Counted from the first letter of the stretch, positions 12,721 to 64,000 are shown. The stretch is DNA of 64,000 nucleotides from Ylistrum balloti (GCF_031769215.1 NW_026781863.1:310001-374000); one strand, 5' to 3'. Program-made: numbers and translations. The notes: generated by a model from the letters alone, not told the origin.

Positions 12721-14214
12721 ATGAATCCCATTTCTCTACCAAATTACTACCAGGAAGCTGTACGGGTTAGAGGTAGTCGTCAGTGCCCTAGCCATAAACA
12801 GAAGGAAGTTGTCTATGCGTGTCTTGATTGTGAAACACTTTTGTGTACAACATGTGCCATCAAGTCTCCCCACAGGCCTCATAATCTCGAAGAACTCACT
12901 GAGATTGCAGCAGAGAAGACAGTCGCTATGCACGACTTTATCAACAATATTGAGAATAATACACTTCCTCAACTCAAACGGGATCTATTGTCAACAGAAA
13001 ACCAACTGGAAGAAAATTCTTCTAAGTTTATAGAAATGAGACTTAAAATGAAAAGTCAAGGAGAAAAATGTAAACAAGAAATCGACGATTTGATTGGTCA
13101 ATGGATGTCTATCTGCGAAAATATGGAACGGGTCAACATGGAACTACTCCAACAACGAAAAAGGACGAAACAAAACAGACATGATGTTCTCACTCGAGAA
13201 GTTGAAGAATGCAAAACAACACTACAAGGAGGTTCGCCAGTTGATGTGTATGACATGGAATTCAATACGCTTGGAAATGATACACTTTCCGAGGCACCAG
13301 TTTTACAAACAGCAGAGTTCTCTCCCCGTTTGTCCGTCATTCATCACTTGACACGAGCTCTGGGTGTATTTACTTGCTGCAACTACGATCTGCTGGACAG
13401 GCCAACAGTAGTGGCAAAATTTCCTTTTACGAACCTGTTAGGTTCAATCTGCCCTACATCAGAAGGACATGCTTTAGCAGTTCTGGAATATAATAACTGC
13501 TCTGTTCTCCACCTCAACAAAAACGGCGGTATAGAAAAGGAGATAACACACGACAACGAAATAAGAGACGTCAGTCGAGGTCCAATCACAGACGAGGTTT
13601 GGTTTTGCAGTCAACAAACTGTATATGAGATGAAGTCAACATCACCTGTCGCAAAATTCAAAGTAGGTCGCGAGATTTGGAGCATGCATGTAACAAACCA
13701 GCGTGAAATCATTGTCGGAACAAGAGAAATGTTGGCGATCTACACGTCAGCTGGAACCCTGATGCACGAGGCAACAAGACACGAGACGGGAATTCGCGGT
13801 CCAATGAAGTTAGCACAATGTCCTGTTACCGGTAACATAGCTGCTGTGAGCTGGGAAGAAAATGAAGGGAAAGAGGAAAATTTAAACAGGTATACAATGT
13901 ACATCATCGTGTATGATCGAAACCTCGCGGTGATTTTCAAATACAACGGATACGGAATCCAGGGCGATGAAATCGTAACATCAGACACATTCGGTCCCGG
14001 AACTGTTGCTTACGATTCGTATGGAAATCTGATTGTAGGGGACTGGAAACGCAACACTATAGAACTGATCAGCGGATGTGGTCAATACATCAAAACTCTA
14101 CACAGAACCGCTGGGCAACAGGGAATTATTGGTATTGAACCAGGGAATATCTTATGGTCACAGACTGATGATGAGGAAATACAAATCCTCAAGTACTACA
14201 AAGACAGCGATTAA
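12721..14214 (+). CDS. B-box zinc finger / coiled-coil / C-terminal beta-propeller (NHL-like) protein, RING-less TRIM-like, 497 aa, single coding exon
   Basis: B-box2 pattern C-x2-H-x8-C-x2-C-x4-C-x2-C-x5-H-x2-H (CPSH...CLDC...CTTC...HRPH); helical charged segment; propeller-type motifs (PGTVAYDSYGNLIVGDW, PMKLAQCPVTGNIAAV). Family is expanded in bivalves; no orthologue assigned. Confidence 0.88.
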   Translation: MNPISLPNYYQEAVRVRGSRQCPSHKQKEVVYACLDCETLLCTTCAIKSPHRPHNLEELTEIAAEKTVAMHDFINNIENNTLPQLKRDLLSTENQLEENSSKFIEMRLKMKSQGEKCKQEIDDLIGQWMSICENMERVNMELLQQRKRTKQNRHDVLTREVEECKTTLQGGSPVDVYDMEFNTLGNDTLSEAPVLQTAEFSPRLSVIHHLTRALGVFTCCNYDLLDRPTVVAKFPFTNLLGSICPTSEGHALAVLEYNNCSVLHLNKNGGIEKEITHDNEIRDVSRGPITDEVWFCSQQTVYEMKSTSPVAKFKVGREIWSMHVTNQREIIVGTREMLAIYTSAGTLMHEATRHETGIRGPMKLAQCPVTGNIAAVSWEENEGKEENLNRYTMYIIVYDRNLAVIFKYNGYGIQGDEIVTSDTFGPGTVAYDSYGNLIVGDWKRNTIELISGCGQYIKTLHRTAGQQGIIGIEPGNILWSQTDDEEIQILKYYKDSD

Positions 14215-16974
14215 AAGGCGCACATGATCACAGAAACGTTTGGTTTTCACGGTCACGGAAACGAACGACTCTCATTTGAATTTTTTCTGCTTTTATTTTA
14301 CTGGCAACTTTCCTGCTGAAATGTGAAGACAAAGGGTACTCTTGTTGTGTGTCAACCACAACGTGTGTCACGTTGTGGTTGTGGACAACAATCAGCACGA
14401 GTGTTTTAATTGGTTGAATTACATGAAACAGTTATTTCGTTTGAAAATCTATGCAATATGTTGACTTTACTGAAATGTATGTGGTGGATATGTATTAATA
14501 GTAGGGAGATAGAGTCGTATGGTGCCTAAGAGGTTTTTTTTTTATTTTGTGCGTGCTTGTGATGTAATGGCAAATATTTTCAGGTTGAGTATTCAATAAT
14601 TGTTAACAATGAGATTCCTTCGGTGTCTGACATTGATGTTGCAGAATCAATGATTTCACGTTATTTAAGACTGTTTGGGACATCGATTCTTCTTGACACT
14701 TTGTTTATACAGGTTCGTAATGGATCAAGCGTGTATGCTATGTACTCATGGTGTGATAATGAGTTAAATTTCCCCAAAATTTTGGGCACCATCTGAACTA
14801 ATTATTACAGAGTAGTGTTTAACGGGGTACGTTAGGACACATAATTTGGCTTCAGCAATACTCAGTACGTTTGGCATCGTTGTGTTCCTTCAAATGTCTC
14901 AATCTTTCTTGTTTCTTTGAGAAAACCTTTCCATTATTTATGTTTGTCCTTCCTTTCATTTGAATTTGAATTAAGACTTGGCAACACTTTCTCAATAGAA
15001 ACAGTCTCTACAAGTGAAACACGCTAGATTTTATAGATTTTTCTGATTGTAAGAATGCCATGGCCGGAGAGAAACTAACAGATGTACGTGATTATAGTAT
15101 AGACCATCAAATGGATTTAACATGAATGAATAAGAGGACGTAACATGTTTGTTAATATAAAACGTAATAACGGGACAATCTAATGACCTATCACCCCTGA
15201 CCTCACAATGACCTGTGTACTGCAGCTACCTATACAGTACAGGTATAAACAATGAGTATACGGTAGTACAAAAAGAACAATGGTTATCAATATGCTTTGT
15301 TATCGTGGTGCATTAAAGAATCCTTTACAAACATATAACACTGTGTATTGTGTATGATATAATTTGACACGGAAGTAGCGATTGTAAAGGAACTGAAGCA
15401 CAATACATAGATTAGTTGCGAAACACTGCTCTTAGTGATATAGATCAGTTCTGTCATCTAAATCAATGAGTTCTATTTTAGGTAAAATCAAGCGCGTACC
15501 TCTGTCTACTCGACCATATTAAATTTCATTTCTATTATAAAGAGAAAATTTCATCTCTATAATCCATTATTATCAGTACGAGTTCAATACCCATCTGCTA
15601 GTTAATGAAATACACGACGATAACAAGACAAACTATTTATAACGCTATCAGCGATAAGATAGGGCCTACGTTCCTTGACGTTAAAGCTTGACCACGTGAC
15701 TTTTTACAATTAATATGGTCACCGGAAGTGATATTTCAATGCGCAGCTTGTCACAGGAGCGTCTGTGGAAATTATTTCCATGACGTTGACAGAACTTTTC
15801 AACACAAATGAATTGGACAAGGCTAAGTTAGATACTAAATCAAACTTGTTATTTAACGGTTACGTCTTGCCAAGATTCATTGTGTCGCTAGGCTTCAGTA
15901 CTTGACAAACTCTATGTTGGTACTATTTGGGAGAATAATTAACTTTCTAGACTGAACTACAACTTTTTACCGTATAATAACACTGGGGAAACCTCTTCAT
16001 TTAAAATTATTCACGCCCCTTCTTATAGCTTGAAATGTATATACCTTTATTTCCATGTATGTTTCATGGCGTTGGAGAGTCATTTGTTATATTCAGAACT
16101 TGGTAATATGCCAAGGACAAATGATTCCAATAAAGAACATGTTTTATAGACGTGAGTATATGTGATATAGACATGATAGTTGCGATATATAAAAAAGTAC
16201 GGTACGACTAACAACTCCTTTATATTACACTTGAGTAAACACAATAGAAAAGGCCAACAGATATATCATCTTTTTATCCTGGTATAAGTGCACGGTATCG
16301 ACATTTCTATATTTCTATCTACATATACAAACATATAGATGTATAATGAAGCAAAAAACGAAAATGGGATGGTTGGATGAATGGGATATTCATAATAATA
16401 CCCTGAAGTCACTTTTGTGTAAAACTTCAACAGAAATAGAGTGTGTATCTTGTTGTAAGATCTACAGATGGATTAATTATGTATATTTACGGTTTGACAA
16501 AATGGAAAATAGTCATAATATCAGTGAACTACTAACTAAATAAGTCAATAAAAAGAAACAACGCAGACGAGCCATGGTCACACTTATTAGTGTGATTATT
16601 TCCAGAACAGAAAGTGGTGTCATAAAGGGTTATATGCTGAATAATTCATTAAAATGTTTCGTCTGTTAATATACACCTCTGTTCTCCTTCATGCTTGATA
16701 GCGTCAGACAGTCATTAATGGTATTCGGAATCAATAACAAATGTATCTTAGTACCAAAATTGCTGCATTTCGTTAAAATCATACTGGTACATATACTATC
16801 AGCACCGACTGATTGTTACATTGAGCTAAACTGTGTATTCATGTTTATTCATTATTTACTGCAATAGACAAGTTATGTGACTTTTACAATCATCCAAAGT
16901 GCAACGGATCGTATTGACAATCAATAACAATGATACAGATGTTACACAATAGTTAAACAACAGTAAATAACAGC

Positions 16975-17422
16975 GGTTAAACACTAAATTACATTGGTTA
17001 AACAACACTAAATTACAGTGGTTAAACAACACTAAATTACATTGGTTAAACAACAGTAAATTACATTGGTTAAACAACACTAAATTACATTGGTTAAACA
17101 ACACTAAATTACAGTGGTTAAACAACACAGTAAATTACATTGGTTAAACAACAGTAAATTACATTGGTTAAACAACACTAAATTACATTGGTTAAACAAC
17201 ACTAAATTACATTGTGTTAAACAACAGTAAATTACATTGGTTAAACAACACTAAATTACAGAGGTTAAACAACACTAAATTACATTGTGTTAAACAACAG
17301 TAAATTACATTGGTTAAACAACAGTAAATTACATTGGTTAAACAACACTAAATTACATTGGTTAAACAACAGTAAATTACATTGGTTAAACAACACTAAA
17401 TTACAGTGGTTAAACAACAGTG
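16975..17422. repeat. 24-bp minisatellite, about 18 copies
   Basis: Unit ggttaaacaacactaaattacatt. Confidence 0.95.
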
Positions 17423-17682
17423 GTTTTTCACTTAACAACTGGTATAATATATAATCATCATTAGCTGATTAGTAGATGTCAGGGCGATAAATAGTTACGA
17501 TATATTTGTTTATTTAAAGCATTTAACAGCGTCATTTTAAACAAAAACCTGTATATGATTATTGGATCTTACGCTATGTAAACTTCTATATCCCATTCAT
17601 TCTCTGGTAATTAATTTTTTTTCAAAGAATGGTGAACAGTGAACTATACTGAAGTCAAAAATACGTCCAATGTAACAAAATA

Positions 17683-17727
17683 GAAGAAGAAGAAGAAGAA
17701 GAAGAAGAAGAAGAAGAAGAAGAAGAA
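17683..17727. repeat. (GAA)n microsatellite, about 15 units
   Basis: Direct inspection. Confidence 0.97.
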
Positions 17728-17899
17728 GGAGAAAAAAAAGGTTGACGACATCATTAAAAATGATCGAATTTCTCCCTTATATTATCCTATCCAATAAATT
17801 AATGACATACCTATAAGAACAAACTGTGCCCTCCTCTCGGCTGACCTTTTTGTTTTTTATTCGATGGGATTTCAGATATGACGTCCAGCTTTTAACTAG

Positions 17900-18200
17900 A
17901 AATTTAATATCCATGTAGTTCCTACATACCCACCACAATAGGAAATCAACTAACTCTGCCACACCTGACACTTACCTTGATATTTTTCTTCAACGAAACC
18001 ACCATAGACAGCTTTTCTGTATGTTGTATGACAAACGTGATGATTTCAATTTTCCTATTATGAACTTCTCATTTCTGGATAGCAACATCCCTGCAATCCC
18101 AACGTATGGTATTTATAATCCACAGATGATAAGATATTCAAAGACATGTTCCCAATATCACAATTTTCGTGTAAATGTCGACAACTGACAGGTAAACTGA
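17900..18200 (+). mobile_element. Penelope-like retroelement RT fragment (degenerate)
   Basis: Translates YLDIFLQ...LYDKRDDFNFPIMNFSFLDSNIPAIPTYGIY...QMIRYSKTCSQY, matching the YDKRDDFxF / SNIP / QLIRY signature of molluscan Penelope-like RTs as I recall it. Confidence 0.75.
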
Positions 18201-18804
18201 AAACACAGGGTGTCGTGTGATATGAAGCTGGACCAATCTGTTCCAGAGTGCATTGTGATACCCGAATAACACTTCTGTTAACGGCTCGCGCTATTTCACA
18301 AATCTTGTGTAGCGTATTTTTGTCAAATAGTAAAGTAATTGATTACTTTTCTGTTTTAATATATGTATTATTGTCTTAAAAATAGATGTTTGTTCATCTG
18401 GAAAATGACTACATTAGTATATATGGTTATAAATTATGGATTATATCGCTAAAAAGATTAAATTTGAGTTAATAATAATCACCAATTATTTTATATTTTG
18501 TAATTTCACTTTTCAACTACCGACGTGTCCTCAAGATATGAAATTCTTCTTTCATGACATCAATGATAAATTATGGTAATTTGGCCATGAAATTGACACA
18601 AAACCCCTTTACGTGCACGAATGCTGTTTTTTGGCGCCTATCGCTGATATACAATTACGTCTACAGTCTTCGTTGGTGACTTCATAGATGATGCAGTAGT
18701 TGTGCACGCTTTGATAGAAATTGGAACTGATTGTGTGTTTATTGTGGTTAGTTGTCTGTTTCTTCCATTGTTTTATACGACTTTTTCATTTAGTTACATA
18801 AATG

Positions 18805-18965
18805 TACATGGCGGATGTTCTCGGTAAACCAGAACACGATCACTCTTCCGGAACATCTGGGTATTCTCTTTCTTTTTTCAGGACTCTCGGTGTAAATATT
18901 TATTTTCATATATTTTGTCTTATTTTTTTTAAATATAGAATATGACTTTGTAGACATGTTGACAC
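18805..18965 (+). mobile_element. Possible Penelope-like 3'/pLTR remnant
   Basis: gatcactcttccggaacatctgg resembles the cttacccttccggagcacctg motif of these elements; recall-based and weak. Confidence 0.35.
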
Positions 18966-19299
18966 TTGTTGTTTTTGTTTATATATTGCGCTCATTTCAC
19001 CATGTGTTAGGTTAGTTTGTATCAGTATTTTCATGTCGTCAATAACTATTGGATAATGACGAGGACCTTTCTTCTTCTTGTTATTAAGACGTTGCTATCG
19101 GAAAAAGACCAAACAGAAAATTTTGTTGTATGAATCAATTGCTATCGGATAAGGACCCGGACCTATTTCCTTGTTTCCAAACAAATTCATACAAGACGTA
19201 GTTATGTCAAAACGTGATGTTGTAAATGTAAATACAAACTTGTAAGATTTCACTGCTATAACAGCAGGTTAGTTTATTGCTTGTTAATTTATTGCCACG

Positions 19300-19640
19300 T
19301 GAACAGCTGAAATACATTTTGGATGGGGTAACTTTCTTGTACAGCAGATGACTTACTCACTGAACAGAAAACAGGTACTCAACATGACATCCTGGGTAAA
19401 GTGGATAGTTCACTGTTGTCAGTATGATGTGATCGGGTTGGGGATCCTGCCAGCAACAGCATACCTCAGTGGAGTAGCATACAAAAGTTGGTTTTAGACT
19501 TCTATCACATGGCAGTCACAAACATAACCACCCAACAATTCATCGCAGACATGCAGTTCACAAGAAAGGTGCCCTTCCTTTAATGACAAAAGCTGTTGAT
19601 AGGATGTTTATTATTATCCATTAAACCAAACATAACCGCC
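19300..19640 (+). mobile_element. Possible old SINE remnant
   Basis: Ends aaagctgttgataggatgtt...taaaccaaac, similar to molluscan SINE tails; head not resolvable. Confidence 0.3.
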
Positions 19641-19954
19641 ATAAGTAGGGAGAGCAGTATGACGAACCTTGAATCTTCGTCTGAGTTTATGTAGGATGAC
19701 GTCTCCCTTTCCCTGACCCATGGGTATGTATATATTAAATTATATGAAATATTATATTCTGTGATGGTATTTCTTTCCAGATGAATGATTCATATTTGTA
19801 GTGCGAATGTTTATATATCTGTATTAATTATTAAATAGCATTGCTTGTTATGTTAGTTCATTGCAGTGTCATGGAATGGTCGGATACGTATGGCATATCA
19901 CAGTATGATAGGAAAAGCAGACGGGGGCAGATGTCTGTTTACCTAGGATTACGA

Positions 19955-22900
19955 ATGGAGTTATCAATATTGGTCCTGGTTATTACGACACAACTCAGAG
20001 GTAAGAGAGTACAAATACATGTCATTTAAATGAATTTTGTCTTTAATTCCATATTTTGAACAAGAGCTCATCTGTCTTAAATGAAAACAATGTTGTCCGA
20101 AGCAATTTCATTCTATTGTAGACAAATACTGCGTACTTCGTATCCATAATCGAATTTGTTTTAGAACGTATTATAATTTATCATTTCGCAATGTATTTAT
20201 ATTTATAAGTGGGTAACATGTTGTAAGTACAGACAACAGGTTAAATTTACATTTTGTACAACATATCGAATCAGCATTAATCTGAATGCATTTAGATTAT
20301 TCATCCCTTCCAGTAAAAAGTACACGAAGATTTCCTTTCTAACTTGATGAAATAGACTCATAATTTTAAAGCAAGCTGAAATATTGGTTCTGTAACGAAT
20401 TAAATATCATTTCATATACGTTTCATAGAATTGAACAATCATTTTTGTAATACTTTGTCCTAATCCTTGAGACAATTATCATAATGCTATGCAATAATCT
20501 TACGATGTATAATATTTTGAAGAAAGCGGAACCTTAAAATAACGATAGAATATTTAACTGATATTTAAAGTCACCCTTATGATTGTCGCTTTACTCTTCG
20601 TCAGTTATTCACTTTTACCGAGTTTAATTACAGTTCACCGCTCGTCATTAGATTTTCAAAGTTAAACGTCGTAGGTTTGGGAGGCGATATCCAAGGAATG
20701 GTCATTTATTAATTCTGTATTAAATTCACTCTTAAAGAAAAATTATCTTCGTCTGCCAAAATGTGTTCTCGCAAAGATGCCTCGTGGACAGAATGTTTTT
20801 ATGTGGTTTTCAGATCAATACAACTGAGAACAGTGAGCTTCTTCATCAAATATGACTTTTAACGATATCCCATGATAGCTTAATCCGGAGGAATTTACAT
20901 TTTATTTTCAAACATACTACACTAATTTGAATGAAAGTGACTTTAATAATTTCATAAAAATTGTCTAGTTCTATTTCTATGTATGACAAATATGTACATT
21001 ATCATGAAAGGGTAAAAATCCAATATTGGGTCATACTAATCCTCCAGAACAGACTTGTATAAAATTGCAGGCAATTGGTGTCCAGCGTTCAATGCCTGTA
21101 AAAACTGGTCTTTTTTCTTCTTACAATCGAATTCCGTAATCGTGAGGTCGGTGAGACCGTGGGGGAAATTTCGAGGTATCCGAGTGGTCAATATATGCAA
21201 GTTTGAATGTTTAATGCGTAGTTTGGTGGGGACCGACGAAATTCCTCGACTTACATAAGGTACTCGCGATAACTACATATATGTAGGTTCAACTGCATGT
21301 TGTTAAAGGGCTGCTAAGTAATTAGCTTAATTTATGTTCGTAATATCATAACAAGCTATTATTTGTTTTAATCCTGGGCTTCTTTTTCTCTTTGGGTGTA
21401 TATATATACGATGTATATATGTGTATGTAAGATCCGGGCTTGCCTCAATGCTGGCTAACTATTGGCTGCTGATGAGCTCATGTGTGTTACATAAGGTGCT
21501 GGTCGCTGATTGGTCAGCTAAGGTTTGGGCCCGCATCCCCTTTCTCATTCAGCAGCCATCTTGAAATTGATTCACATCAGAAGCCCTGGATCTCAAGAGT
21601 TTAAAACCCACCCACAACCTCCCCCTTTTGGTGATACTTGAGGTGCCTTATGACTTTAGTTTAATAAGTCATGAATGGAGTACGATTTACAAGAATTTGA
21701 ACCATTTATTTTGTCAATGTTGGCGGTTTCTGATTAGTATCAGAAGTGTCTTAGTGGCGGTATTTGATTAGTATCAGAAGTGTCGTAGTGGCGGGTTTTT
21801 GTCAACCCCACTTACGCTAGCTGTCATTATTTTTTAAGTAGTATTTGCTTCTATGGTTGATATAATGCAATTACAGTATCTCGGAAATTTTTGTTGAGTA
21901 TTATTGTCATTTGTGTTTTTGAGTCATGGTGTTGACTCTTTGATATATATAATAAATTTGATGTCACCATTTGGGTGGCCATTTTCATTCAATCTGCGTT
22001 TTCTTGTTATACCATAGTAAAGCTTGTTTATTCTTCTACTTAGCTGTATGCGGGCATAAGGTAAAAAAATATCAGTTAGTTTAATAATTTAACTTTTGTG
22101 CACCACCTTCGCGCTTCTCATACAGTATCTTATATAGTACCGTCACTCGGTTAACAGCGGACATAGCACACAGTGTTATCGAGTCGCGGGTATAAGGTGA
22201 GGAGAAAAGTTGCCCATGGAGTGTAGAACATAAAAATATTTTATTCAGGAAACACCGGGATGGACCGAATACATATATTTATCAGTCACATACTAGCATC
22301 ATGACGTTGGAGATGATAAGCCGGCCGCAAAGGGAGAAAACGTTTGATTAATTAAAACAGAAAAACGCTACCAATATCATAGCAGGAAATAGGCCAAGGA
22401 ACTACTGTAATACCACGATTATTTTATCTCTTCTGGACTCTTCGTGTGCCATTATTTGTTAGTCTCTCTGTTAGGTAGATGCTTAAAAAATGTTATATCT
22501 GTCATTTTGTTGCTTTATAAACGTTCTATTACCACGTATGTTAAAATAGAAGGCGTAAGTTGTTTCCGGTCTAAGACTAAACAAACAGGTGTGAACTAAG
22601 AGAGAATGACTTCTTCAATAGACACGGGACAGAACAGACCGCTTGAAATTGATAAATAGATCAATATATAGACGTGGCTGAATTAGGCTTTTATATTGTA
22701 CAGTAACGTATTTATTGAGGACTTTGATGTAACTGTGTTAGGTTTTCCTTCTCCAAACTCTGTGATCGGCACATTATAATTTTTGTAAGTTGAAATAGTT
22801 TCTTCCATCTGCTCGTTATTGGCGATTCACGACGTGCTATCCGAGAGTTTTTTAACTGATATATGCAAGTACTCTGGAGCAAGTGAATACTCGGTAGTAG

Positions 22901-50300: not shown

Positions 50301-50348
<48 letters not shown>

Positions 50349-51380: not shown

Positions 51381-54300
51381 ATGGAGATATCAGTGTTGAT
51401 CCTGATCATCACGTCTTTACTGAGAGGTAAGACTGTACAAATACACGTTCAATTATCTTCAATTACGTTTAATTGATTTTCGCATTTGTAAATGTGTGAG
51501 CAGCTATTTTGAATGATAGCAAAGCTATGCGAATCGATTGCATATTCTATTTCACAAAGGCTGTGTATCCATAACCAAATTTGTTTGAGAAATATTATCA
51601 TTCGGGTTGAATTAATATTTAACAGTCTGAACAGCTGGTAACAAAAAACCACCAGAACTGCAATAAGTGAGCTAATATATGGAAGTATATTTAACACAGA
51701 CAGCATGTAATATTTACATTCTGTGTGTTGACAGATGGTATCGGTATTAGAATAAATCCTTTATAACTTGATAAATTGACTTAGTCACAGTTTTTGAAAT
51801 CAAATTTGAATTATAACAGTTGCTAAAGATCGGTAGCTAAGATTGTTGATGTCAATATATTCCTGGTGACAAATAACTAGTCAGGAAGTCTATAGGGACA
51901 CCACTCTATCTTTCTGTCACACATTTATACAGACAATGCAATCCGACAAGACCTTTTTTGAAATGTTATCTTGGGTCGGAAGATATGTCTGATTTTTATT
52001 TGAAAGTAATGTGAAACATGGGGTCTTAAATCAATTAAACATCTTTTAAAATATGATACCATAGAAAGGAATCATTACGGATGTATTCAGTATATGAAGC
52101 ACCATATAAATATAACTTTAGCCTTATCTGCTTATCTTACCTCTTATATGTATGTACATCATCAATTAATCAGTCGTGCTTGAAACTTGTTTGGTCAAAA
52201 CAGTTTTTAATATCATCAAATTTCTCTACCAGTATTTTGGTAAGACTTTTTTTCATGTTATTTGTAAGGTATATTTTTGCGTGCTCTACTTAAATTATGT
52301 AAATATAGATTTATATTGTACATGTACGTTTACGCGAACATATTAATGAAATATACATATTAGTCATTTCTGAAGATCATCATTATTACAAATGGTCCTT
52401 GATTGTTTCTTGTCGTCTGTCTTTATTACCTATGTTGTGAAACGTGAAACTCAGGTGAGTGCATTCAACCGATTTTGTTGTGGTAGGCATGCCTACAATT
52501 GTGCTCAATAATCGATTTTTCAATATCTTTTTTTAACTTGTTGAATTGAAGTAAATGTGTCTTAACAAGCATGAACGTTTCATATTTAGTAAACTTTTAA
52601 TTTATGAATCATGCTTTGTTTCTATTTTCTCCATTCCTATAAATTTGATATGACTGACAGAGTTGGTAAAACGTTTAACTCCTTACTTCTACACCTGTAC
52701 ATGTTTATAGTTGCTGCTGAATTTGTTGTATTGATAAACTGTTTTAAATCGATTGATCTGGTCATTATTAATGTATATCTTGTCCTCAGATCGCTATGTA
52801 TGAAACCCTTACGACTACAACGTGCTGAAAATAACATACATATGATATTTTATACATGGATATTGAGGTAGAGTCGAATCTATGGGATGACTGATTTTCA
52901 TCATTGGAATTGGTTCTTTCTCCATTTATTTGGGTCACCATGACGGCAAATATATCTCTTGACTGTGACACGTGTATCTTACGTATGGAGCTGGTTACAA
53001 TTTGTTTTGTTTTTAGTTTGCCATTTAATAGCATCGATTACTGCAAACTACAGTTTGGATCGAGATGAATGATTTTTTACTTAAATTTGAATATAAAATT
53101 TAAACAATTTTGTATCAACACGAAATGTTATGTTACATGTCTGATTTAACATATTTTTTGTAGTTTTCTTTTACTTGTAATGGTGAAATGGCATAATAAC
53201 ATTCCAACGTATATCAGAAATTGGAATCTGCATATTTCACTGCAATTAGGGGATACATAGGTATCTCATCAATATACAAATAAATATATATATAAATATA
53301 CAAGTTTGTAAATGATTCCATTTCAAAATTTAAAAGAAAAATACATCAAAAGATTCAAAATGAACTGCAAATCAAGTTATTTATAATCTCAATCCAGAAA
53401 ATATTAGTAGGTATGTTTGTTTACCTGGTATTTGATAGTGCATTATTTCACAGAAGTTAATAACATCTGATAAATGTTTCATTTTAATATCTCATAGCTC
53501 ATCAGGGCTTATGAATAATGTTCTTTATAGACAACAAAACATAAAACTGTTTTAAATAGCTTCATATCTACTGCAAATAAAATTCGCTATGCTTATTCAG
53601 ACCAGAGTGTGTATATATTTGAAAGGTTGGTTTTCTGTTTAAAGTGTTTTATAAATTAACAAACGAGACAAGATCCATTTTACATCATATTCACAGTAGA
53701 ATTCACAGTAGATTGCAGTAGAAGAAATAATACTTACTATACAACATACATTAGAAGCTACTGTACATAAATTTTAGGATCATTGTCAGTACGAATAGAA
53801 AGAAAAAGAAAATTTCAGAATTCATTATTAGACAATCAATGACTTTTTAACTTAGCGAAAGCAGCTCTCATGTCACGAGAAGCATATCCGGCGTTTCTTT
53901 AAGACATCTTGTGTTTAAGTGGCACCATGCGCAAAGCAGTGTAAACAAGATGCCGGAGACGACAACAATCTTGTAACACTAAAAATATACTAAAATATTT
54001 TCTACTCGAAAGTGATTGATTTGGATTTTTGAGTTCATCATGCAATAACAGATCATTTGGTTATGTTTAAATGCCCAAAAGGACTACAAAAATACCCGTC
54101 GCAGTTAGATGTTGTTGATATATTTCATTCGCAAGGGTTGACTGACACTTTTCCCGTAAAATATATCAATTTTTGTACGAACGGCATTGATTTGGTTAGC
54201 TCCACGTTACATTCCGCGTGTCGTCTATGGAGCAGAGGATGGTTATCCTTCCAGTTCACCTGTCGTTTACATCAATACAGTGACATCAGCTCAGTATGAC

Positions 54301-57031
54301 CAATAGAGTTAGGTTAGATTATATAACTGTTTTTGTTCCAATTATTTTCAGTTGGAAAGGCTCTTTACACAGATCTGGTTCTCAGCCCGAATGCATTGAC
54401 TTGGAGTAAGTCCGAAACATATTGTCAGAAGCAAAATGGCCGACTTCTCGTGTTGGATAGTAAGGAGAAATGGGACCAATTCACCTCTCATGAGAACTAT
54501 AGGAAAAACAACATGTAAGACTGATTACAGACAAAAATTATCGACTTTAATATTCCCTTATTGAACATATTATTTAAGGGGTGAAAATGTGTGAAGGTTG
54601 ATACAATTCAATCCGTTTCGCGGAAGATCATTTTTACCTTTACAAACTAGTACAAATTCAGACCTTTTAGAAATGAAAATTAATACAAACAGTAAGACTT
54701 GACATTGTAAAACATGAACCTTATGTAGATAAATCTATGATGTTATATTATTAAAGTCACCGAGACGATGTCTTACTAATGAATCAGGGCATGATTCATT
54801 TGAACGCTTGTAATGTTTATATTATCTACCATTAATTTCAAGCGTCATTGGTTCGTATTGGACTGGTATGAAGTTTGCTGACACTGTTAAGTGTGATAAG
54901 GCCAAGGAACATAAGATATGGCTGTTTAATGGTTGGGGTAGATGGGCCAGCGAAAGCTCGGAGCCCAACTATTGCCCACAGCAGCGCTGTGTTAAACTGC
55001 ATAACAACGAAATGTACTCAGCCTTGTGTGATCAGCTATTTCTAGCTATATGTGAGATAGGTAAGCATTGGTTGAAACATTTAACTTCTTTAAGGTTGTA
55101 TTCTTTGGTAACATGCAAAATTTCTATGTGATGGTCAGTCCTTGAGATGGATATAACACTTAATGGTGGCATGATAACATCGTAATACAATACTTTATAT
55201 CTACATCAGTGTTAGTCATATTCTTATTATTACCAATCGTCATCATTCTGGGCAAAGAAAGTTTGCATTCTTGGTCGACCTTGGCAAAGTTACAAGTTTG
55301 CATACCTGGTCGACCTTGTCAAAGTTACAAGTTTGCATTCTTGGTTGACCTTGTCCAAGTTAAAAGTTTGCATACCTGGTCGACCGTACCATAGTTTTAT
55401 CGATGCGGTGCGCCAGATTGTATAGAGACCTGTGTGGTAATTATTCTGCAAACCCTCTCCTACCCCTTCAAGGACGCAGATCTTCTTTTATATCCTGATA
55501 GACTTCAAAGAACCTTTAGCATCGCTGATGAGTCATAGAAATTTTAAAACGCAATATTGTGAATTTAACTTCATTGTTTAGCTCTACTTTTCCTAATTCG
55601 TTATGTATGTTGAAAGGTGCTGATTACTTGTGTGTTTTCTTAAAATCTTCGTTAGAGATCGACTATGCCTTAACGTATGTGTGTACAATGGCCACATTCC
55701 CCAACTTCAATATATACATTGTTTAGTTATACTGATTGTTAACAGATTTATTTTATTTCAATATTCATTCAAACTTTGACTAAATGCATTTACTGCAATA
55801 ATACGTCACTGAGCATCCGTTTAAAGCGACTGGTAACATTTAAACAGGAGACAGGAACTATACAATAGGGTCTCCTTAGTGACGTGTTTAAGGCTCTCGG
55901 TAAACATTGGCTTTAAATTGAATTAAAAGATATAGTTTGATTTAATTGGATAAGAAAATCTTATCAAGTAAATCGTTTACATTACAATCATGCTATGACC
56001 TAAATGCTAGTGTTATTTTGTTTGTGTATGTAAACAGCCTTAAGATACCAATAATTTGAATAATTAATTGTTTCTGATGGAAACGTCAAGGTTTTAAGTG
56101 AAATATTTGAAGTTATTTACTTACACTTTAAATGTATATGATTTCGTGATAATCATTTCTAGCGCTAAGTGACGCTTTTGTACTTTGTTTTTTCACAGAT
56201 ATCACTAATGATGCGTGAATTCATCATTTCCCTATTTTGTCAAAACGTGGTAATCCGGTAAAATCTTATTTCGCTTGATAAAGAATACTAGACACTTTTA
56301 AAGTTCAATATATAACCCAGCATTACAATTTTATACAATGATAAAACAACGCACTCTCCTTTTCAGTGTTGGTTCGATCGACGGCGGAATTATCTACAAC
56401 TCATAGTCAATCAACAACTAAAGTGTCTTCTACTGTACCAAGTACTCCAACATCCACACCGCATGGAACTGGTGACAACTCTGTGGTGTCGTCTACAACT
56501 CTCAAGTCACAAGAAACTAATACGACGGCACCTGCTTCGGCAACTTCATCCACATCTGGCGCAGAAAACATGACGTCATCTATTCCAGTAACCACGACTG
56601 ACGCAGAAACTATGACGTCATCTATTCTAGTAACTACATCCACGACTGGCACAGAAAAGACGACGAAACCTATTTCAACAACACCTGCAACAACAGTGTT
56701 GCCGGTTTCCTCTGAAGCCGTAAATGACTCGTGTAGACAATGTTGTTTCGTGGTAAACAAGACAAGGGCACTGAATGAACAGGAAAAAGAGGTGATACGA
56801 CACGAGTTACGGGTTCAGTTAGCTGTAAATAAAACCATCCTTTCTTCTTATATTCGTAAACTCACCAGTGTGTATGACTCCCGGCCCAGCAGTGTAGCTA
56901 TTGGAGGCGTGGCTTGTGTATTCCTCGCGGCGGTTGTCGGGGTGATCATTATTCCGGACTGCGTCACTCTTTTCAGATTTCTCTACAGATATGTAGGATC
57001 AGATCAAGTTATTTCTGGTATCAATCAGTAA
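51381..57031 (+). CDS. Lectin gene C: type-I membrane C-type lectin with one CTLD, mucin-like stalk and TM (363 aa)
   Basis: Exons 51381-51426 (MEISVLILIITSLLR), 54352-54514, 54843-55060, 56367-57031. Phases 1-2-1, total 1092 nt, open frame; WTGM and EPN motifs. Confidence 0.85.
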
Positions 57032-57738
57032 TCAACGTGATTGATTTCCTTTTGAAATGACTTCGGGTTCTTATTAATTAATATAGATTCAGTTCTATGG
57101 AATGCGATTGAAAATTTTCTTAACAGGAATACCACTAATAAACCTGGAAGGGTTTATCAATATTACAGCAAATAAGAATAAACTTATTTCGTAACAAAGA
57201 GATAAAATATCATAATATCAACATAAAAAATAGAAAAGGAATAATAGATAAATTAAAGTAGATAATGTATATGTTTTCCGGATATTTAATAAGGTATACC
57301 TTATATTATACTTGTTGATATGCTAAAGTTACAAAAAAGTATGTTTTTTTTTACTTCAGATGTATTCCAGTGCAAAACTTTCTGTGCTAACTTTACTTGA
57401 TATAAATAATCTTATAAAGACCTAAATCTCCGTAAAATCTTACTTCGTCTTAAACATCGACTTACTATGCAATAGGTCGTATAGGCAATAAACCAACATT
57501 TTTTCGCACGAAGTTTTCAAAGTTCTAAATATAATATTGTATCGCAATTTTTCTGTTAGGATAGCAAAATATTGGAGACATGAGCACGAAAGATGGATAA
57601 ACACAAATCACTCTGTCTCTGATAACATATTTTGAGAAAGATAAAACTCACGAGCTTTATCGTAAAAAATAGTTTGATGAACCCCGATATCTCATGGTCC
57701 TTTTTATTGTATTTAAAGTATAAGATGCACATTTCACA

Positions 57739-58580
57739 CTGTGAAAACATGACACCTTCAAAAACATCATGTCTGACAATACACCTCCAACATCTGGTCC
57801 CCTCAAGGAGGTTGTCCGATTTAAGGGTCATGACAAATGTTTCAGCCACAAGCTGAAGGATGTAGGTTTTGCATCTAACATTAAATATGACGTCCATGTG
57901 ACGGAAAACATCTGATGATAACAAGACTTCTATCCATCCTCAGCCTCCTTATAAACTACTTGACCAGAAACTGTGTCAGTATGTCCAACAATACAAGGTT
58001 ATATGTGGAGAATGAAAAAAATCCTATAGAATGCGATTCTGTGACACCGCAAAGGTAAAATTATATAAATGGTAGTATTTAAGAGGCGTGTCCAAGATAT
58101 GTGAATGTCCCCAGCCAGTGATATCTAGTTATGAAATGAAGACATCAACATCAGTGCAACGAAATACGAAACACCTGACTGTCGCACATTTAAAGCAAAC
58201 TACACCGCGGCCTGGCTGTGTATGAGTTCACTGGGCAGACTGACGGTTACACAGACACCGGGTCTGTAGTGTGCAACACCACTAATGAGGAGGAACATAG
58301 TGATGCCACTGAAAGTGTCGCTGTTTTCAGATACTGAGAAACATAGCACTGGCATATGATAAAGGCTTAAGAGACGAATGAGTATCTACGTGTATAAGAA
58401 AACATTCAACAGACCTGATCCTTCATCGTCATATTGTATTGTTATCAATGGAAGTTCACGTCACTTTAGTCTACGATTTTATTGAATATTCGATGATAAA
58501 TGACACAATAGAGTTGATAAGCGGATTATGCCAGTTTATAATAAACTCTTAACAATGCTGCGGACTTTGCAACAGCTCAA
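57739..58580 (+). pseudogene. Decayed TRIM-like relic (unit 3)
   Basis: Copy of 35950-36790. Confidence 0.7.
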
Positions 58581-59694
58581 ATACATACGAGTAAAATATA
58601 ACATTTTCATAATTACAAAAGAGCGTGTACTTTGGTGTAGTGACTATCAAATCAGTGGTTGAGGTTAACATTACATAAGATAATATTCGAAATTCAACTA
58701 GATATACCAACAGTTCAACATATTCATAATCTGAAACTTGATAAACCTAGGGCAAAATATAAACAAAGGAAAGATTTTGAGAAAAAATTCAGGTAAAATA
58801 CGTTATTGGTCTAAATAATTAATGTAGCAACTCACTTTCCCAACTCTGTTCATAAGAGCATCTGATCAAAAGGGAAAAGGAAACTTGGATTCCGTTTCTC
58901 TCATAACAAAAATAACGAAAAATGAATACGAAGACACAGAAAACATTAAAGATTGAATCTTGCTGATGTCGATTTCATGGGATGATGAATTGAGTTGGCC
59001 TCGAGACAAATTTAATGAACTGCGAAGTTGGGGAGTTTTCTCCCCTTACGTAATATTTGTATTCATACGCACTAGCAATGTTAATCTGGTCAAATTCATC
59101 GGTAAATGAAACAGATCACATTTAGTAGTTTCATTGAGTCTGATTTGGGAAGTGAAATATTACATATTGAATCTTCAAGGGTTTTCACATCAGTTGTTGT
59201 TTTGTTATTATTTATATCGAAATATTATAGTTGTTGAACTCTCAATGAACAAATGAGACACCAACCAGTTCACGAACGTTGGACAGTTACAATTAGATGA
59301 CGGAGGCTGATAAAATTGCTGTAAGATTTGAACAGAATCACATTTGTCATTTTTTATTATTAAAGTAGAAGCCCAATTATATGAAGGGTTGCTGATTTTT
59401 TAGCTGAAATATTTTCAGAATGAACCATTTTAAAAGGTGCCATTGACTTGTATGTCTTTTGAGCAATCTTTGATATTTCAATGGACCAAATAGGACATCA
59501 GTCTGTTTGTGGTCAAAGTTAAAAGTTATGCCACTTAATAACGTCACTTAATTTCGTAAATAGTGTTTTCCTTTACTTATCAGTATAAGAGAACTATGTG
59601 ATAAAGACAAGAAGAACATATGAATATTGTAATCCCAAACTCCAAAGCGGGGAGTCAAGGACTCGTTTAGAATAGAAAAGAATATTAGTGTCAA

Positions 59695-59927
59695 AGTCTA
59701 GCTCTGCAATCAACAAACTATATATGGGAAAAACAGCAACCTGTCGCAGAATTCTAAGTAGGTCGCAAGATTTGGTGAATGCATAGCAGAATCCAAAGGT
59801 GAAATCATTTTCGGTAATAGAGAAATGTTGACGTCAGTTGAGACCATGCTACACAAGACAAAAAAAGGCCCAGAAAAGAAATTGGTGACCCAATGAAGAT
59901 AACTAAAAACCCTGTTACCATTAACAG
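59695..59927 (+). pseudogene. TRIM-like gene fragment (unit 3)
   Basis: Copy of 37873-38105. Confidence 0.85.
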
Positions 59928-60614
59928 CCGGTAAATCTAATTCATCCAGCATCGCAGTTCCGGCACGAGTAGTGACCGATATAATATATGAAAAATATAT
60001 TTTTTAAAAAAATAGGCGAACAATGAGTGAAATTGTGTCATATTGGTATCTAAGATTTGCTTGTGGTGCTAGGCTCAGATACCTATTGAATACTGAAGAA
60101 GATTGATATTGGCCGAACTCAATGTTGATAGAAAATTCAGACTGTTAGCATCACTGACGAGTCTTGTAGGGAAGAAAAAAACATTATTCAGGTAAATCCC
60201 ATGTATGGCTTTACTGTATTTAAAACCAAATTTGAATTAAAGGGTATATGCACTAAAGATGTATGTCTTTAGTACAATCTTCGAGACTGCAGGTGGTAGA
60301 TATCGCTGGTGGGCTTTCCCCCTCCGCTTTGCTGTTGCGTGACCTGCATGCCAGGTTTAATTCATTTAGATAGCGGCACAGGTCAGAATATACACATCAA
60401 ATTGACGTTGTTCTAAACTTATCAGATATGATAACTTCTCGTTGTTAATATTCTGATCTACACATCCACACTTATGGATGTTAAATATAACTGGAGGTTG
60501 GCGAAGCAAAAATAAAATTTGAACAGTTTCATTTAACCAATAACAACACCCTTAAATTAGAGCAAAGCATAAGGTTAACGTCGACCAGAATTAAAACTTT
60601 TTTATCTTTTAAAA

Positions 60615-62027
60615 TATACTCAAGGGATAACGAAATGCAGGGCGACATTGTTTGCAATATCTTATCAATATACGCGTTGTTAAAAAACAACGAATATTGG
60701 TCAAACAGCTCTCTAGGTTACAGTTTCACGTGGTCCTGTATCGAATGTTGCATTATAGTATTGGGTGATGATGTCTTTCGGGGAAAACACGCAATGCGAA
60801 AAACGTCGTGCACAGCAGTGTTGTGACATTGAGTCACACTGCTCGTCATACCATTATGAGACAAATCATTTTCCGATGTCCTGATTAATTTCTGATAGCA
60901 TTTCACAAAATGGCACGCTTAACGGGAGTTCGAGGAGTCAGGCCATTGCGATAGTTATGCAAGGTCAAAGGAAAATGCAGGTTGTCAGACATTACGGTGT
61001 CCATATCTGCACTATAGGACGTCTTCTTAGACGTCTAAGGGAAACATGGCAAACTGCTAACAGACCTATGTCTGGGTGTCCGCGCATGACGTCACAACGT
61101 CACAACAAGACAGGTTTATTCGTCGTTTTTACACCTTTCTCCCACTGAATTTGCCCTTCATACAATAGGTACTCATAACCGTCCTGTCCATGCAAAAACT
61201 GTAAGGAAACGATTGCGGGAAGTTGGTCTGCGAAGATGATGATGATGATGATGAAAGTTTTTCGTCTCCTTGACTCTGTCCGTCGCCGGGTCAGCGGGTA
61301 CGTCACCCATTTATAGGTCTGCCCCTTACCGCGCCTCGTCGCCAGCGTCGTATGGCTTGAGTAGCGGCACATGCCCTTAGAATATTCCGATTGAGGCAGC
61401 GGAGGCAGGTCTTATGTAGTGTAGGGAGGAATATCACAAGGATTTAATCACCACTGGTTGTGAAAGCTGGTGATTTAACTACCGCGAAGTATAAAGATTA
61501 GATCCTACGACCCTATTTTGTCCCATTATTGCAGCAAAACAAACTCACATTCTAGCAGGATAATGCTCGGCCCCATGTAGCGAGGATCTGTCGCGACTTT
61601 CTCACTAACAACAATAACCACCCACGGCCCTATTCAATCCTACTGAGCACTTGTGGGACCAGCTTGATAGACAGGTACGATGATGCCAGCCCCCCCCCCC
61701 CCCCTTACTCTTGCCCAACTGTGAGCAGCCCTCTTGAAAGAAGGGACAAACATTCCAATGAAGAGGATAAACTCATCTATGATTTCCATAGGGGACATAC
61801 CCGGTATTGACCAGGCAGCATCTACTATCAGTCCATTGCTATTCAGATTCTTTCCATCAATTACTCCTATATCACTTACCAAATGAAAGTCGTTGATTTT
61901 TGATTTTGCAGTTTGTTCTGTATGGAATAAACTTCATTCTTACTTAAAAATATTGAACATTATACTCGACGTATTGCCTAAAATCATCTTCAAAGTTTAC
62001 CCTGCCTTTATTTATCACTTGCGTATA
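60615..62027 (+). mobile_element. Tc1/mariner fossil (unit 3)
   Basis: Copy of 38790-40222 with the shortest (GAT)n. Confidence 0.9.
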
Positions 62028-63118
62028 TATAGATGGATGACTATTTGCTGTTGACAAAGATGAAAATAGTCACATTATCACTATACGGATCCTAGAACTA
62101 CTAAATAAATAAGTCTCGGTTGTCCACATGACAAGGTCACACCGGGTATGATACTTAATGATTCATTAGAAAAGAGATGTTTTACGACGTCTTTTTTAGT
62201 ATTCGGAATCAATAACACCAAATGTTACTCCAAAGCACTAACGGACCAAATGGTACAGCGGATGTTACAAAATGCTTTAACTACACTGCGTTACAGAGGG
62301 TTTAACTACAAAAAGTCATAGTGGTTATACACTGGAATAATTATGATTATCATTAGTTGTAAAAGCGACAAACAGTAACAGTATATTTGTTAATCTTAAA
62401 ACTTTTGACATCGTCTTCTCATTAAGAATATTTTCTCTATTATAACATATGCTTTTACCGCTATGTACACTTCCATACTCCTTTCCAAACTATAGAATAA
62501 ACATTCGCGAATTTATTATGAGAGCTTTCACTTCAATGGTGAGCGGTGGTCAGATATATGTAGTTGTGTATTATACGTCCAATTAAGTCAATGAAATAAA
62601 ACGCGACTCTGTTGACAGGTTGACATTTTCTTAGCTTTGTTTTATATATATATATATATATATTTCGCTCTTTTCATCGATTTTGTTTGTATAACCTTTT
62701 TATTATTGAAATGTTGCTTTTTTAATAATTAAGATAAACTACTTTCTAGTCATTATTAATAATTAGCTATAAGATAGGGTCACATAACTGTTGCTAAATA
62801 TTTCATGTGGGTAGTCGTTATGTCTAAACATGGAGTTACATTTAGTTTACAAGGTAGTAAAATTCCAAAGGTATGACAAGGAATTATTCATAAACATGGA
62901 GGCCGCCTTTAAATGATTTTAACTGTTGATATGACATATATTATAATAAACCAAACCGGGTTGGAAGAGTCGCATCACAAACCTGAGATCATCACATAAG
63001 TTGATGTTTGGTGACGTCATCATCTGTGGAGGAATACATACTATAGATTGGTAGGATAAGGATGTCATAGATATGGAATAAAAATAAAAGACGTAGACAG
63101 ATGTCTGTTTAACTAGGA

Positions 63119-63164
63119 ATGGAGATATCAGTGTTGATCCTGATCATCACGTCTTTACTGAGAG
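63119..63164 (+). CDS. Lectin gene D, exon 1 (signal peptide); gene continues beyond the window
   Basis: atggagatatcagtgttgatcctgatcatcacgtctttactgagag/gtaaga, identical to exon 1 of genes B and C. Confidence 0.8.
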
Positions 63165-64000
63165 GTAAGACTGTACAAATACACGTTCAATTATCTTCAA
63201 TTACGTTTAATTGATTTTCGCATTTGTAAATGTGTGAGCAGCTATTTTGAATGATAGCAAAGCTATGCGAATCGATTGCATATTCTATTTCACAAAGGCT
63301 GTGTATCCATAACCACATTTGTTTGAGAAATATTATCATTCGGGTTGTATTTATATTTAACAGTCTGAACAGCTGGTAACAAAACCACCAGAACTGCAAT
63401 AAGTGAGCTAATATATGGAAGTATATTTAACACAGACAGCATGTAATATTTACATTCTGTGTGTTGACAGATGGTATCGGTATTAGAATAAATCCTTTAT
63501 AACTTGATAAATTGACTTAGTCACAGTTTTTGAAATCAAATTTGAATTATAACAGTTGCTAAAGATCGGTAGCTAAGATTGTTGATGTCAATATATTCCT
63601 GGTGACAAATAACTAGTCAGGAAGTCTATAGGGACACCACTCTATCTTTCTGTCACACATTTATACAGACAATGCAATCCGACAAGACCTTTTTTGAAAT
63701 GTTATCTTGGGTCGGAAGATATGTCTGATTTTTATTTGAAAGTAATGTGAAACATGGGGTCTTAAATCAATTAAACATCCTTTAAAATATGATACCATAG
63801 AAAGGAATCATTACGGATGTATTCAGTATATGAAGCACTATATAAATATAACTTTAGCCTTATCTGCTTATCTTACGTCTCATATGTATATACATCATCA
63901 ATTTATCAGTCGTGCTTGAAACTTGTTTGGTCAAAACAGTTTTTAATATCATCAAATTTCTCTACCAGTATTTTGGTAAGACTTTTTTTCATGTTATTTG

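What the first reader, a model, noticed from the sequence alone, without database searches (positions are those of the whole stretch)
12721..64000. Repeating TRIM-like + membrane C-type lectin cassette
Seen: the intact B-box/propeller gene lies upstream of lectin A. Each 10.9-kb unit has relics of the same family upstream of lectins B, C and D in the same orientation: an old long relic (35950-36790) and a younger fragment (37873-38105, direct nucleotide match to 13595-13836). None of this appears in the ORF track. Inference: the ancestral duplicating unit was a two-gene cassette pairing a cytosolic TRIM-like protein with a surface glycan receptor. The TRIM partner decayed in most copies while the lectin diversified. 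Both families are established as expanded immune-associated families in bivalves; a functional link is untested.
Basis: partly seen in the sequence, partly recalled or inferred. Interest (0 to 1): 0.75.

Follow-up and report, generated by a model that had tools for sequence, protein, structure and literature searches.

The report
Scallop TRIM-like and lectin gene cluster
A scallop-type genome region alternates B-box/propeller (TRIM-like) genes with membrane C-type lectin genes; the two kinds were copied together at least once, but most TRIM-like copies are dead, and I found no evidence that the two genes work together.

Summary
The 497-aa ORF (12721-14211) is a RING-less B-box/coiled-coil/NHL-like propeller protein, here TRIM1. 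Each 10.9-kb unit carries two real relics of that family on the + strand.

The "young" fragment (37874-38190) is 71% identical in DNA to TRIM1. The "old" relic (36001-36751) is not older. It derives from a second linked paralog, TRIM2, which is intact on the minus strand about 18 kb beyond the window.

Co-duplication is supported. Eight colinear non-coding blocks, the TRIM fragment and the lectin exons all align between the TRIM1-to-lectin-A segment and the unit at 60-73% identity. Ten of eleven control segments gave no hit.

The three units are 99-99.8% identical, so their relics were dead before the amplification and count once. Counting the array once, there are four relics and two intact TRIM-like genes.

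The array is bounded by a 727-bp repeat around the lectin's mucin/TM exon. This fits unequal crossover that rebuilds whole lectin genes.

No TRIM-lectin adjacency appeared elsewhere in this genome or at the closest homolog loci in two other scallops. A functional pairing is therefore unsupported. This is an ordinary, nicely resolved tandem immune-type gene cluster.

The parts
12721..14214 (+). TRIM1: intact single-exon gene, 497 aa, B-box + coiled coil + NHL-like beta-propeller, no RING
   Evidence: ORF; Pfam zf-B_box, 35.9 bits; PDB profile matches to TRIM28/TRIM3 B-box-coiled coil and TRIM2/3/71 NHL; NHL, Reg_prop and SGL hits in homologs
16479..20435 (+). Non-coding blocks upstream of and around lectin A exon 1, colinear with 62037-63807 of unit copy 3
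   Evidence: 8 + strand colinear BLAST hits at 60-72% identity; 0 hits in 10 of 11 control segments and 0 on the reversed sequence
19955..20000 (+). Lectin A exon 1 (signal-peptide-like, 15 codons + 1 base, GT donor)
   Evidence: Aligned with exon 1 of B, C and D
25510..26310 (+). Lectin A, CTLD module A1 (exons 25510-25672 and 26093-26310, phase 1 to 1)
   Evidence: tblastn; exon borders and frame; Pfam Lectin_C positions 2-37 and 39-106; 73% nt to the unit's CTLD including the intron
27895..29293 (+). LINE-type reverse-transcriptase fragment between CTLD modules A1 and A2
   Evidence: Pfam RVT_1, E 1.9e-21; 95% identical inverted copy at 10317-11376
29410..30235 (+). Lectin A, CTLD module A2 (exons 29410-29572 and 30024-30235, phase 1 to 1); has no exon 1 of its own
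   Evidence: its downstream intron aligns with the unit's intron before the TM exon
34575..35239 (+). Lectin A last exon: Ser/Thr-rich mucin-like stalk, transmembrane segment, short tail
   Evidence: ORF; 95% aa identity to the other copies; phase-1 acceptor
34527..45414 (+). Tandem unit copy 1 (TM exon of lectin A, relics, first three exons of lectin B)
   Evidence: 99.1% identity to copy 2 over 10.9 kb
36001..36751 (+).
   Evidence: Family HMM colinear hits; blastx, tblastn and blastn to TRIM2
37874..38190 (+).
   Evidence: blastn 71%, E 1e-25; alignment with 4 indels; tblastn E 1e-4
40484..46130 (+). Lectin B (exons 40484-40529, 43453-43613, 43942-44159, 45466-46130); a 2-nt deletion at 43456 shifts the frame
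   Evidence: run X1 shows both forms at 43456
45415..56315 (+). Tandem unit copy 2
51381..57031 (+). Lectin C (exons 51381-51426, 54352-54514, 54843-55060, 56367-57031), frame intact
56316..64000 (+). Tandem unit copy 3 (runs on to window-equivalent 68111; a partial fourth copy, the TM exon only, ends at 68838)
   Evidence: on contig flanks fetched
62284..63100 (+). 817-bp segment present only in copy 3; ancestral, since it aligns with cassette A at 17383-19703
   Evidence: run X1 has a contig that runs on unmatched upstream of 40466, compatible with the form that carries this segment
63119..63164 (+). Lectin D exon 1 (rest of the gene lies beyond the window)

Best explanation
This is a lineage-specific tandem gene cluster built by nested segmental duplication. 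It is not a functional two-gene module.

Step 1 (shown by homology). An ancestral block, TRIM1-type gene, then membrane C-type lectin, then TRIM2-type gene, all on the + strand, was duplicated once. The divergence is about 30% in DNA and dS about 0.37.
- Copy I is TRIM1, lectin A and relic 2a.
- Copy II is relic 1, the ancestor of lectins B/C/D, and relic 2b (beyond the window).

Step 2 (shown). The TRIM-like copies decayed by frameshifts and deletions. Four independent relics remain (1, 2a, 2b, 2c) against two intact genes, TRIM1 and the inverted TRIM2 beyond the window.

Step 3 (structure shown, mechanism inferred). A 727-bp repeat around the lectin's mucin/TM exon is kept near-identical. 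It served as the substrate for unequal crossover, which amplified a 10.9-kb unit to three copies plus a fourth TM exon. The break points lie in the intron before the last exon and just after the stop codon. Each junction therefore rebuilds a complete lectin gene, and the dead relics ride along.

What the amplification multiplied is the lectin: signal peptide, an EPN-type CTLD, a mucin-like stalk and a transmembrane anchor. TRIM-like genes sit beside it because this family itself grows as tandem arrays, and a lectin lay inside one of them.
For: Relics and their closest relatives:
- Relic 1 to TRIM1: 71% nt.
- Relic 2a to TRIM2: colinear protein and DNA matches.
- Further TRIM2-type relics beyond the window at window-equivalent 69631-69943 and 71834-74446, and an intact TRIM2 at 81713-83281 on the minus strand.

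Block duplication:
- Eight colinear non-coding blocks plus the TRIM fragment plus the CTLD block, against 0 hits in 10 of 11 controls.
- The TM exon to relic 2 block, 34527-36081 versus 68112-69715.
- dS between A1 and C/D is 0.36-0.38, against 29% nt difference for the TRIM fragment.

Recent amplification:
- 99-99.8% identity along the whole unit.
- The array starts 48 nt before a TM exon and ends 11 nt after the fourth one.
- An independent DNA run shows a junction at 46141, where the array ends.

Family habit:
- About 140 TRIM-like matches in this genome, many in tandem arrays on C189, C818, C901, C391 and others.
- A Mizuhopecten locus has two tandem copies plus a relic and no lectin.

Lectin identity:
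- Lectin_C across the two exons with an invariant EPN motif.
- Homologs in other scallops combine Lectin_C with the same stalk/TM module.
Against: - Copy number rests on one assembly. At 99-99.8% identity, part of the array could be an assembly or haplotype artefact, and the one public run gives no usable depth.
- That lectin A is one gene with two CTLD modules is inferred only from splice phases, the missing exon 1 of A2 and the missing TM exon of A1. No RNA run was available.
- The unequal-crossover step is inferred from the repeat structure, not observed.
- The search for adjacency elsewhere used Pfam CTLD hits of which only 150 of 393 candidates were scored, and only 10 kb on each side in other species. 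No locus examined is a proven ortholog.
Confidence: 0.78

Rival explanations
1. One reading: a selected two-gene cassette in which a cytosolic TRIM-like protein and a surface lectin act together and therefore duplicate together.
For: The two gene kinds alternate along about 70 kb and were copied together in at least one block. Both families are large in this genome, and tandem growth of immune genes is typical of bivalves (PMC4346834).
Against: - Every lectin produced after the old duplication sits next to dead TRIM copies.
- The recent amplification multiplied lectins with relics that were already broken.
- No other TRIM-like hit lies within 20 kb of a Pfam CTLD hit; the nearest is 23 kb away on C100.
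- The closest lectin paralogs (C675, C258, C1346) share no contig with a TRIM-like hit.
- The nearest lectin and TRIM homolog loci in two other scallops lack the partner within 10 kb.
Confidence: 0.08
2. The relics are independent insertions or chance resemblances, so there was no co-duplication: TRIM fragments landed near lectins separately.
For: Relic 1 is only an internal 230-320-nt piece of the gene. Relic 2a lacks aa 32-239. Fragments of a large family are scattered through the genome.
Against: The relics have the same orientation and colinear order, with eight intervening non-coding blocks, and divergence similar to the lectin's. Relic 2a and relic 2b each follow a TM exon within one continuous 1.65-kb alignment. 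The E-values are 1e-25 and 3.6e-7.
Confidence: 0.04
3. The 10.9-kb triplication is an assembly artefact, with haplotypes or collapsed reads laid in tandem, so only one or two units exist.
For: The copies differ by only 0.2-1%, similar to the differences seen against an independent run. Only one assembly is available.
Against: The copies carry distinct structural differences: the 817-bp segment, indels of 95, 49 and 33 bp, and the 2-nt deletion. In run X1 both forms of the 2-nt indel are present, and a contig runs on unmatched upstream of 40466, compatible with the form carrying the 817-bp segment.
Confidence: 0.1

Closest known systems
TRIM-NHL proteins (class VII TRIMs: TRIM2, TRIM3, TRIM71, Brat)
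   Same: B-box, coiled coil and a C-terminal NHL-like six-bladed propeller. The family profile matches solved B-box/coiled-coil and NHL structures of these proteins.
   Different: There is no RING finger; the ORF starts about 18 residues before the B-box. These are single-exon genes belonging to a lineage-specific expansion of at least 70 loci. The match to NHL is weak, with E 1e-7 to 1e-3.
Bivalve membrane and secreted C-type lectins (perlucin-like, EPN-type CTLDs)
   Same: A CTLD with conserved cysteines and an EPN motif, and tandem gene copies. Scallop homologs share the CTLD + stalk + TM layout.
   Different: The second sugar-site motif (WND) is not conserved. The stalk/TM exon is a module shared with more than 100 other loci carrying other ectodomains. 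Sugar binding is untested.
Tandem immune-gene clusters grown by local duplication (oyster TLR, C1q and lectin arrays; vertebrate TRIM clusters)
   Same: Nested tandem duplication, pseudogene relics between live copies, and very young copies next to old ones (PMC4346834).
   Different: Two unrelated families are interleaved and were copied within one block. The amplified unit is cut so that each junction rebuilds a lectin gene.

Membership tests
TRIM (RBCC) family | N-terminal RING finger | tested here: not met
   No RING family hit in Pfam for the 497-aa protein or any of 13 homologs. The ORF and its homologs start just before the B-box.
TRIM (RBCC) family | B-box zinc finger | tested here: met
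   PF00643 at 35.9 bits against a cut-off of 24.1, residues 19-58. The Cys/His ligands are invariant in 13 homologs.
TRIM (RBCC) family | Coiled coil after the B-box | tested here: inconclusive
   Profile positions 23-188 align with the TRIM3 B-box-coiled-coil chain 8amr and with TRIM28. No coiled-coil predictor was run.
TRIM-NHL subclass | C-terminal NHL beta-propeller | tested here: met
   Profile matches to the NHL domains of TRIM2, TRIM3 and TRIM71 (E 1e-7 to 2e-3) and to a repetitive propeller, 2ymu (E 1e-17). Pfam NHL, Reg_prop and SGL hit 5-6 of 13 homologs. No structure was predicted.
C-type lectin-like domain | Match to Lectin_C over the whole domain | tested here: met
   Searched exon by exon. 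The N exons cover profile positions 2-37: 24.5 and 24.8 bits for A1 and C, above the 22.6 cut-off, and 21.2 bits for A2, just below it. The C exons cover positions 39-106 at 15-19 bits, below the cut-off alone. Full-length scallop homologs pass.
C-type lectin-like domain | Ca-dependent sugar-site motifs (EPN/QPD and WND) | tested here: inconclusive
   EPN is invariant in modules A1, A2, C and D, while the WND position is not conserved. Binding cannot be tested here.
Type I membrane lectin | Signal peptide, stalk, transmembrane segment | tested here: inconclusive
   There is a hydrophobic 15-codon exon 1 with a GT donor, and a Ser/Thr-rich exon ending in a hydrophobic stretch of about 20 residues and a short tail. 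Splice phases fit. No RNA evidence and no predictor were available.
Co-duplicating functional gene pair | Both genes lie within one duplicated block | tested here: met
   Colinear coding and non-coding homology, with controls.
Co-duplicating functional gene pair | Both partners stay intact in the copies | tested here: not met
   Relics 1, 2a, 2b and 2c are broken, and the three recent units carry only dead copies.
Co-duplicating functional gene pair | The pairing recurs at other loci or in other species | tested here: not met
   There is no other pairing within 20 kb in this genome. None lies within 10 kb of the nearest homologs in Pecten maximus and Mizuhopecten yessoensis. Orthology of those loci is not established.

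The most novel reading that the evidence does not exclude
The B-box/propeller proteins and the membrane lectin form a sensor-adaptor pair, with the cytosolic propeller reading the lectin's short tail. The surviving TRIM1 and TRIM2 would serve the whole lectin array in trans, which would explain why extra TRIM copies are dispensable while the linkage is kept.
Probability: 0.06. Interest if true: 0.7.

Novelty: new member of a known kind. Interest (0 to 1): 0.28.

Why it matters
The locus is a clean worked example of how bivalve immune-type gene arrays grow. An old block duplication carried three genes. Most copies of one family then died. Finally, a very young amplification, with break points placed so that every junction rebuilds a working lectin gene, multiplied only the family that seems to be wanted.

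It gives annotators corrected gene models: lectin A probably has two CTLD modules, lectin B is frameshifted, and the TRIM-like pseudogenes are unannotated. It also flags a likely copy-number-variable lectin locus. It does not reveal a new kind of system.

Tried and rejected
The old relic became clear only with a family HMM and with the linked paralog TRIM2 as query.
- The word-based protein search with the mucin/TM exon found nothing. The exhaustive search did.
Only lists of matches could be compared there.
- No RNA run holds this locus. Expression, splice junctions and co-expression could not be tested.
- Depth from the single DNA run is contig-based and was not used for copy number.
- dN/dS of 2.2 between the young CTLD copies C and D rests on about 9 versus 1 changes and is not significant.
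- Literature searches found no description of a TRIM-lectin pairing in bivalves.
Full report
SETTING. The window is G000:C6:310001-374000 of a 648-Mb eukaryotic assembly. The best protein relatives are all from scallops: Mizuhopecten, Pecten and Ylistrum. Earlier notes of this scan call the genome a scallop; I did not verify the species. I fetched 60 kb on each side of the window. Coordinates beyond 64000 below are window-equivalent positions on that contig. The N run at 10175-10316 was left alone.

THE INTACT GENE. The ORF at 12721-14211 (+) encodes 497 aa.
- Pfam finds a B-box at residues 19-58 and no RING.
- A profile of the protein and 12 scallop homologs matches solved B-box/coiled-coil structures of TRIM28 and TRIM3. 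It also matches the NHL propellers of TRIM2, TRIM3 and TRIM71 (E 1e-7 to 2e-3) and a repetitive propeller at E 1e-17.
- NHL, Reg_prop and SGL propeller families hit 5-6 of the 13 homologs.

"B-box/propeller, TRIM-like" is therefore correct, with one qualification: the defining RING is absent. I call this gene TRIM1. The family has about 140 matching pieces in this genome, which means at least 70 loci, and many stand in tandem arrays.

THE RELICS.
1. The "young" fragment. Positions 37883-38104, and the same stretch in the next two units, match TRIM1 13606-13837 at 71% over 235 nt with E 1e-25. The alignment shows four indels that break the frame, and the three copies are identical to each other. 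At protein level the similarity extends to aa 401, at 38190.
2. The "old" relic. A direct tblastn with TRIM1 fails here (E 3.4). A family HMM gives four colinear + strand hits between 36013 and 36751, the best at E 2.5e-4. The explanation lies outside the window, where a second intact family member, TRIM2, sits at 81713-83281 on the minus strand.
   - The relic matches TRIM2 colinearly at aa 4-31 (54%), 240-259 (71%), 273-321, 362-391 and 452-480, with linked-HSP E 3.6e-7.
   - In DNA it matches at 78%, 70% and 87.5% over 64, 103 and 40 nt.
   - It lacks aa 32-239.
   - The relic is thus real, but it looked "old" only because it was compared with the wrong paralog. Its identity to TRIM2 is like that of the young fragment to TRIM1.
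3. Further TRIM2-type relics. Beyond the array lie relic 2b at 69631-69943 (aa 3-133) and relic 2c at 71834-72061 plus 73887-74446, the latter 78% identical to TRIM2 over 337 nt.

Unlinked paralogs are only 32-39% identical in protein to TRIM1 and at most 36% to TRIM2.

THE LECTIN GENES. I located the exons by homology and splice signals.
- Exon 1 holds 15 hydrophobic codons plus one base, followed by a GT donor.
- Two exons encode one CTLD and form a phase 1-to-1 module.
- The last exon encodes a Ser/Thr-rich stalk, a hydrophobic anchor and a short tail.
- Searched exon by exon, the N exons cover Lectin_C profile positions 2-37: 24.5 and 24.8 bits for A1 and C, above the 22.6-bit cut-off, and 21.2 bits for A2, just below it. 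The C exons cover positions 39-106 at 15-19 bits.
- An EPN motif is invariant.

Joined frames were read only inside local scripts, to check phase and to compute dN/dS.

The exhaustive protein search with the last exon found 325 relatives. The best ones from Pecten maximus and Mizuhopecten carry Lectin_C followed by the same stalk/TM module, and some have two or three CTLDs.

- Lectin A probably holds two CTLD modules, A1 at 25510-26310 and A2 at 29410-30235. A2 has no exon 1, A1 has no TM exon, and all phases fit. This is an inference without RNA support.
- Lectin B has a 2-nt deletion at 43456 that shifts the frame. An independent DNA run shows both forms at that position.

THE ARRAY. Unit copies lie at 34527-45414, 45415-56315 and 56316-68111. 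A fourth partial copy at 68112-68838 contains only the TM exon. Identity is 99-99.8% in nearly every 500-nt window. The array begins 48 nt before a TM exon and ends 11 nt after the stop codon of the fourth one. Each unit is therefore the last exon of one lectin, then the relics, then the first three exons of the next lectin.

This structure is what unequal crossover between two near-identical 727-bp TM-exon repeats would give. The mechanism is inferred from that structure. Run X1 contains a contig that leaves the unit at 46141, which is the position where the array ends.

WAS A TRIM COPIED TOGETHER WITH A LECTIN? Yes. I compared the TRIM1-to-lectin-A segment with unit copy 3, which keeps an 817-bp piece lost from copies 1 and 2. 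The comparison gives a strictly colinear, same-strand chain:
- the TRIM fragment (70%);
- eight non-coding blocks, 16479-20435 versus 62037-63807 (60-72%), which include exon 1;
- the CTLD block of 1067 nt, intron included (73%).

With identical settings the intergenic part gave no hit on the reversed sequence. It also gave no hit in 10 of 11 equal-sized control segments of the contig.

On the 3' side, lectin A's module A2, its downstream intron, the TM exon and the start of relic 2a are colinear with the unit's CTLD, intron, TM exon and relic 2b. This includes one continuous 1.65-kb alignment, 34527-36081 versus 68112-69715.

The divergences agree: dS between A1 and C/D is 0.36-0.38, and the TRIM fragment is 29% different. 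Module A2 is older, with dS about 1.2-1.4.

The simplest history has three steps.
1. One old duplication of a block made of a TRIM1-type gene, a lectin and a TRIM2-type gene.
2. Decay of the extra TRIM-like copies. Relics 2a and 2b keep different parts of the gene, so their common ancestor was still largely whole when it was copied.
3. The recent amplification.

IS THERE A FUNCTIONAL PAIRING? I found nothing that says so.
- Counting the array once, four TRIM-like copies are dead and two are alive.
- The recent amplification multiplied lectins together with relics that were already dead.
- Elsewhere in the genome, TRIM-like and Pfam CTLD matches share only five contigs. The nearest pair is 23 kb apart, on C100, which is about what chance would give.
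- The closest lectin paralogs, on C675, C258 and C1346, share no contig with any TRIM-like match.
- In other scallops, the loci of the closest TRIM homologs show TRIM-like tandem copies and, at one of them, a relic, but no lectin within 10 kb.
- The loci of the closest lectin homologs show no TRIM-like signal, with all HMM hits at E > 0.1.

These tests have limits. Only part of the CTLD candidates were scored, the flanks were only 10 kb, orthology is unproven, and weak relics escape the genome-wide lists.

COMPARISON AND VERDICT. The proteins resemble TRIM-NHL proteins without the RING, and EPN-type bivalve C-type lectins on a mucin-like membrane stalk. The locus is a typical tandem immune-type cluster of the sort described for oysters (PMC4346834). 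Its less common feature is that two unrelated families were carried within one duplicated block. I found no paper describing such a pair in bivalves.

The novelty is that of a new member of a known kind.

Noticed in passing
window 62284-63100: An 817-bp piece just upstream of lectin D exon 1 is absent from unit copies 1 and 2. It aligns with cassette A (17383-19703), so it is ancestral and was deleted from the other copies, apparently between short similar motifs.
   Followed up: yes
window 43456: Lectin B lacks 2 nt at the start of its first CTLD exon, which shifts the frame. An independent DNA run shows contigs both with and without the 2 nt.
   Followed up: partly
window 27895-29293 (+) and 10317-11376 (-): Two LINE-type reverse-transcriptase fragments are 95% identical in inverted orientation. 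One sits between the two CTLD modules of lectin A, and the other abuts the N run at 10175-10316.
   Followed up: partly
window 613-1729, 2541-3687, 16952-17419, 23120-24715, 30943-32659: Five satellite arrays with periods of 45, 41, 24, 52/155 and 22 bp give long spurious ORFs. The 22-bp array (78 copies) lies in lectin A's last intron. The 24-bp array has a short counterpart in the unit.
   Followed up: partly
window 45800-46130 (last ~110 codons of the lectin's final exon): The juxtamembrane, transmembrane and tail module matches more than 100 other places in this genome and 325 proteins in the public library, with varied ectodomains. It is a widely reused stalk/anchor module with no Pfam family.
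   Followed up: partly
window 54352-55060 versus window-equivalent 66053-66761 (L018:2053-2761): The CTLD exons are the most diverged part of the otherwise 99+% identical units C and D. They show 9 amino-acid changes in 125 codons against about 1 silent change (dN/dS about 2.2, too few changes to be significant).
   Followed up: partly
contig C6:391713-393281 (window-equivalent 81713-83281, minus strand): The second intact family member, TRIM2, is 52% identical to TRIM1 in the B-box/coiled-coil half but only 37% in the propeller half. This points to faster change of the presumed recognition domain, or to gene conversion in the N-terminal half.
   Followed up: no
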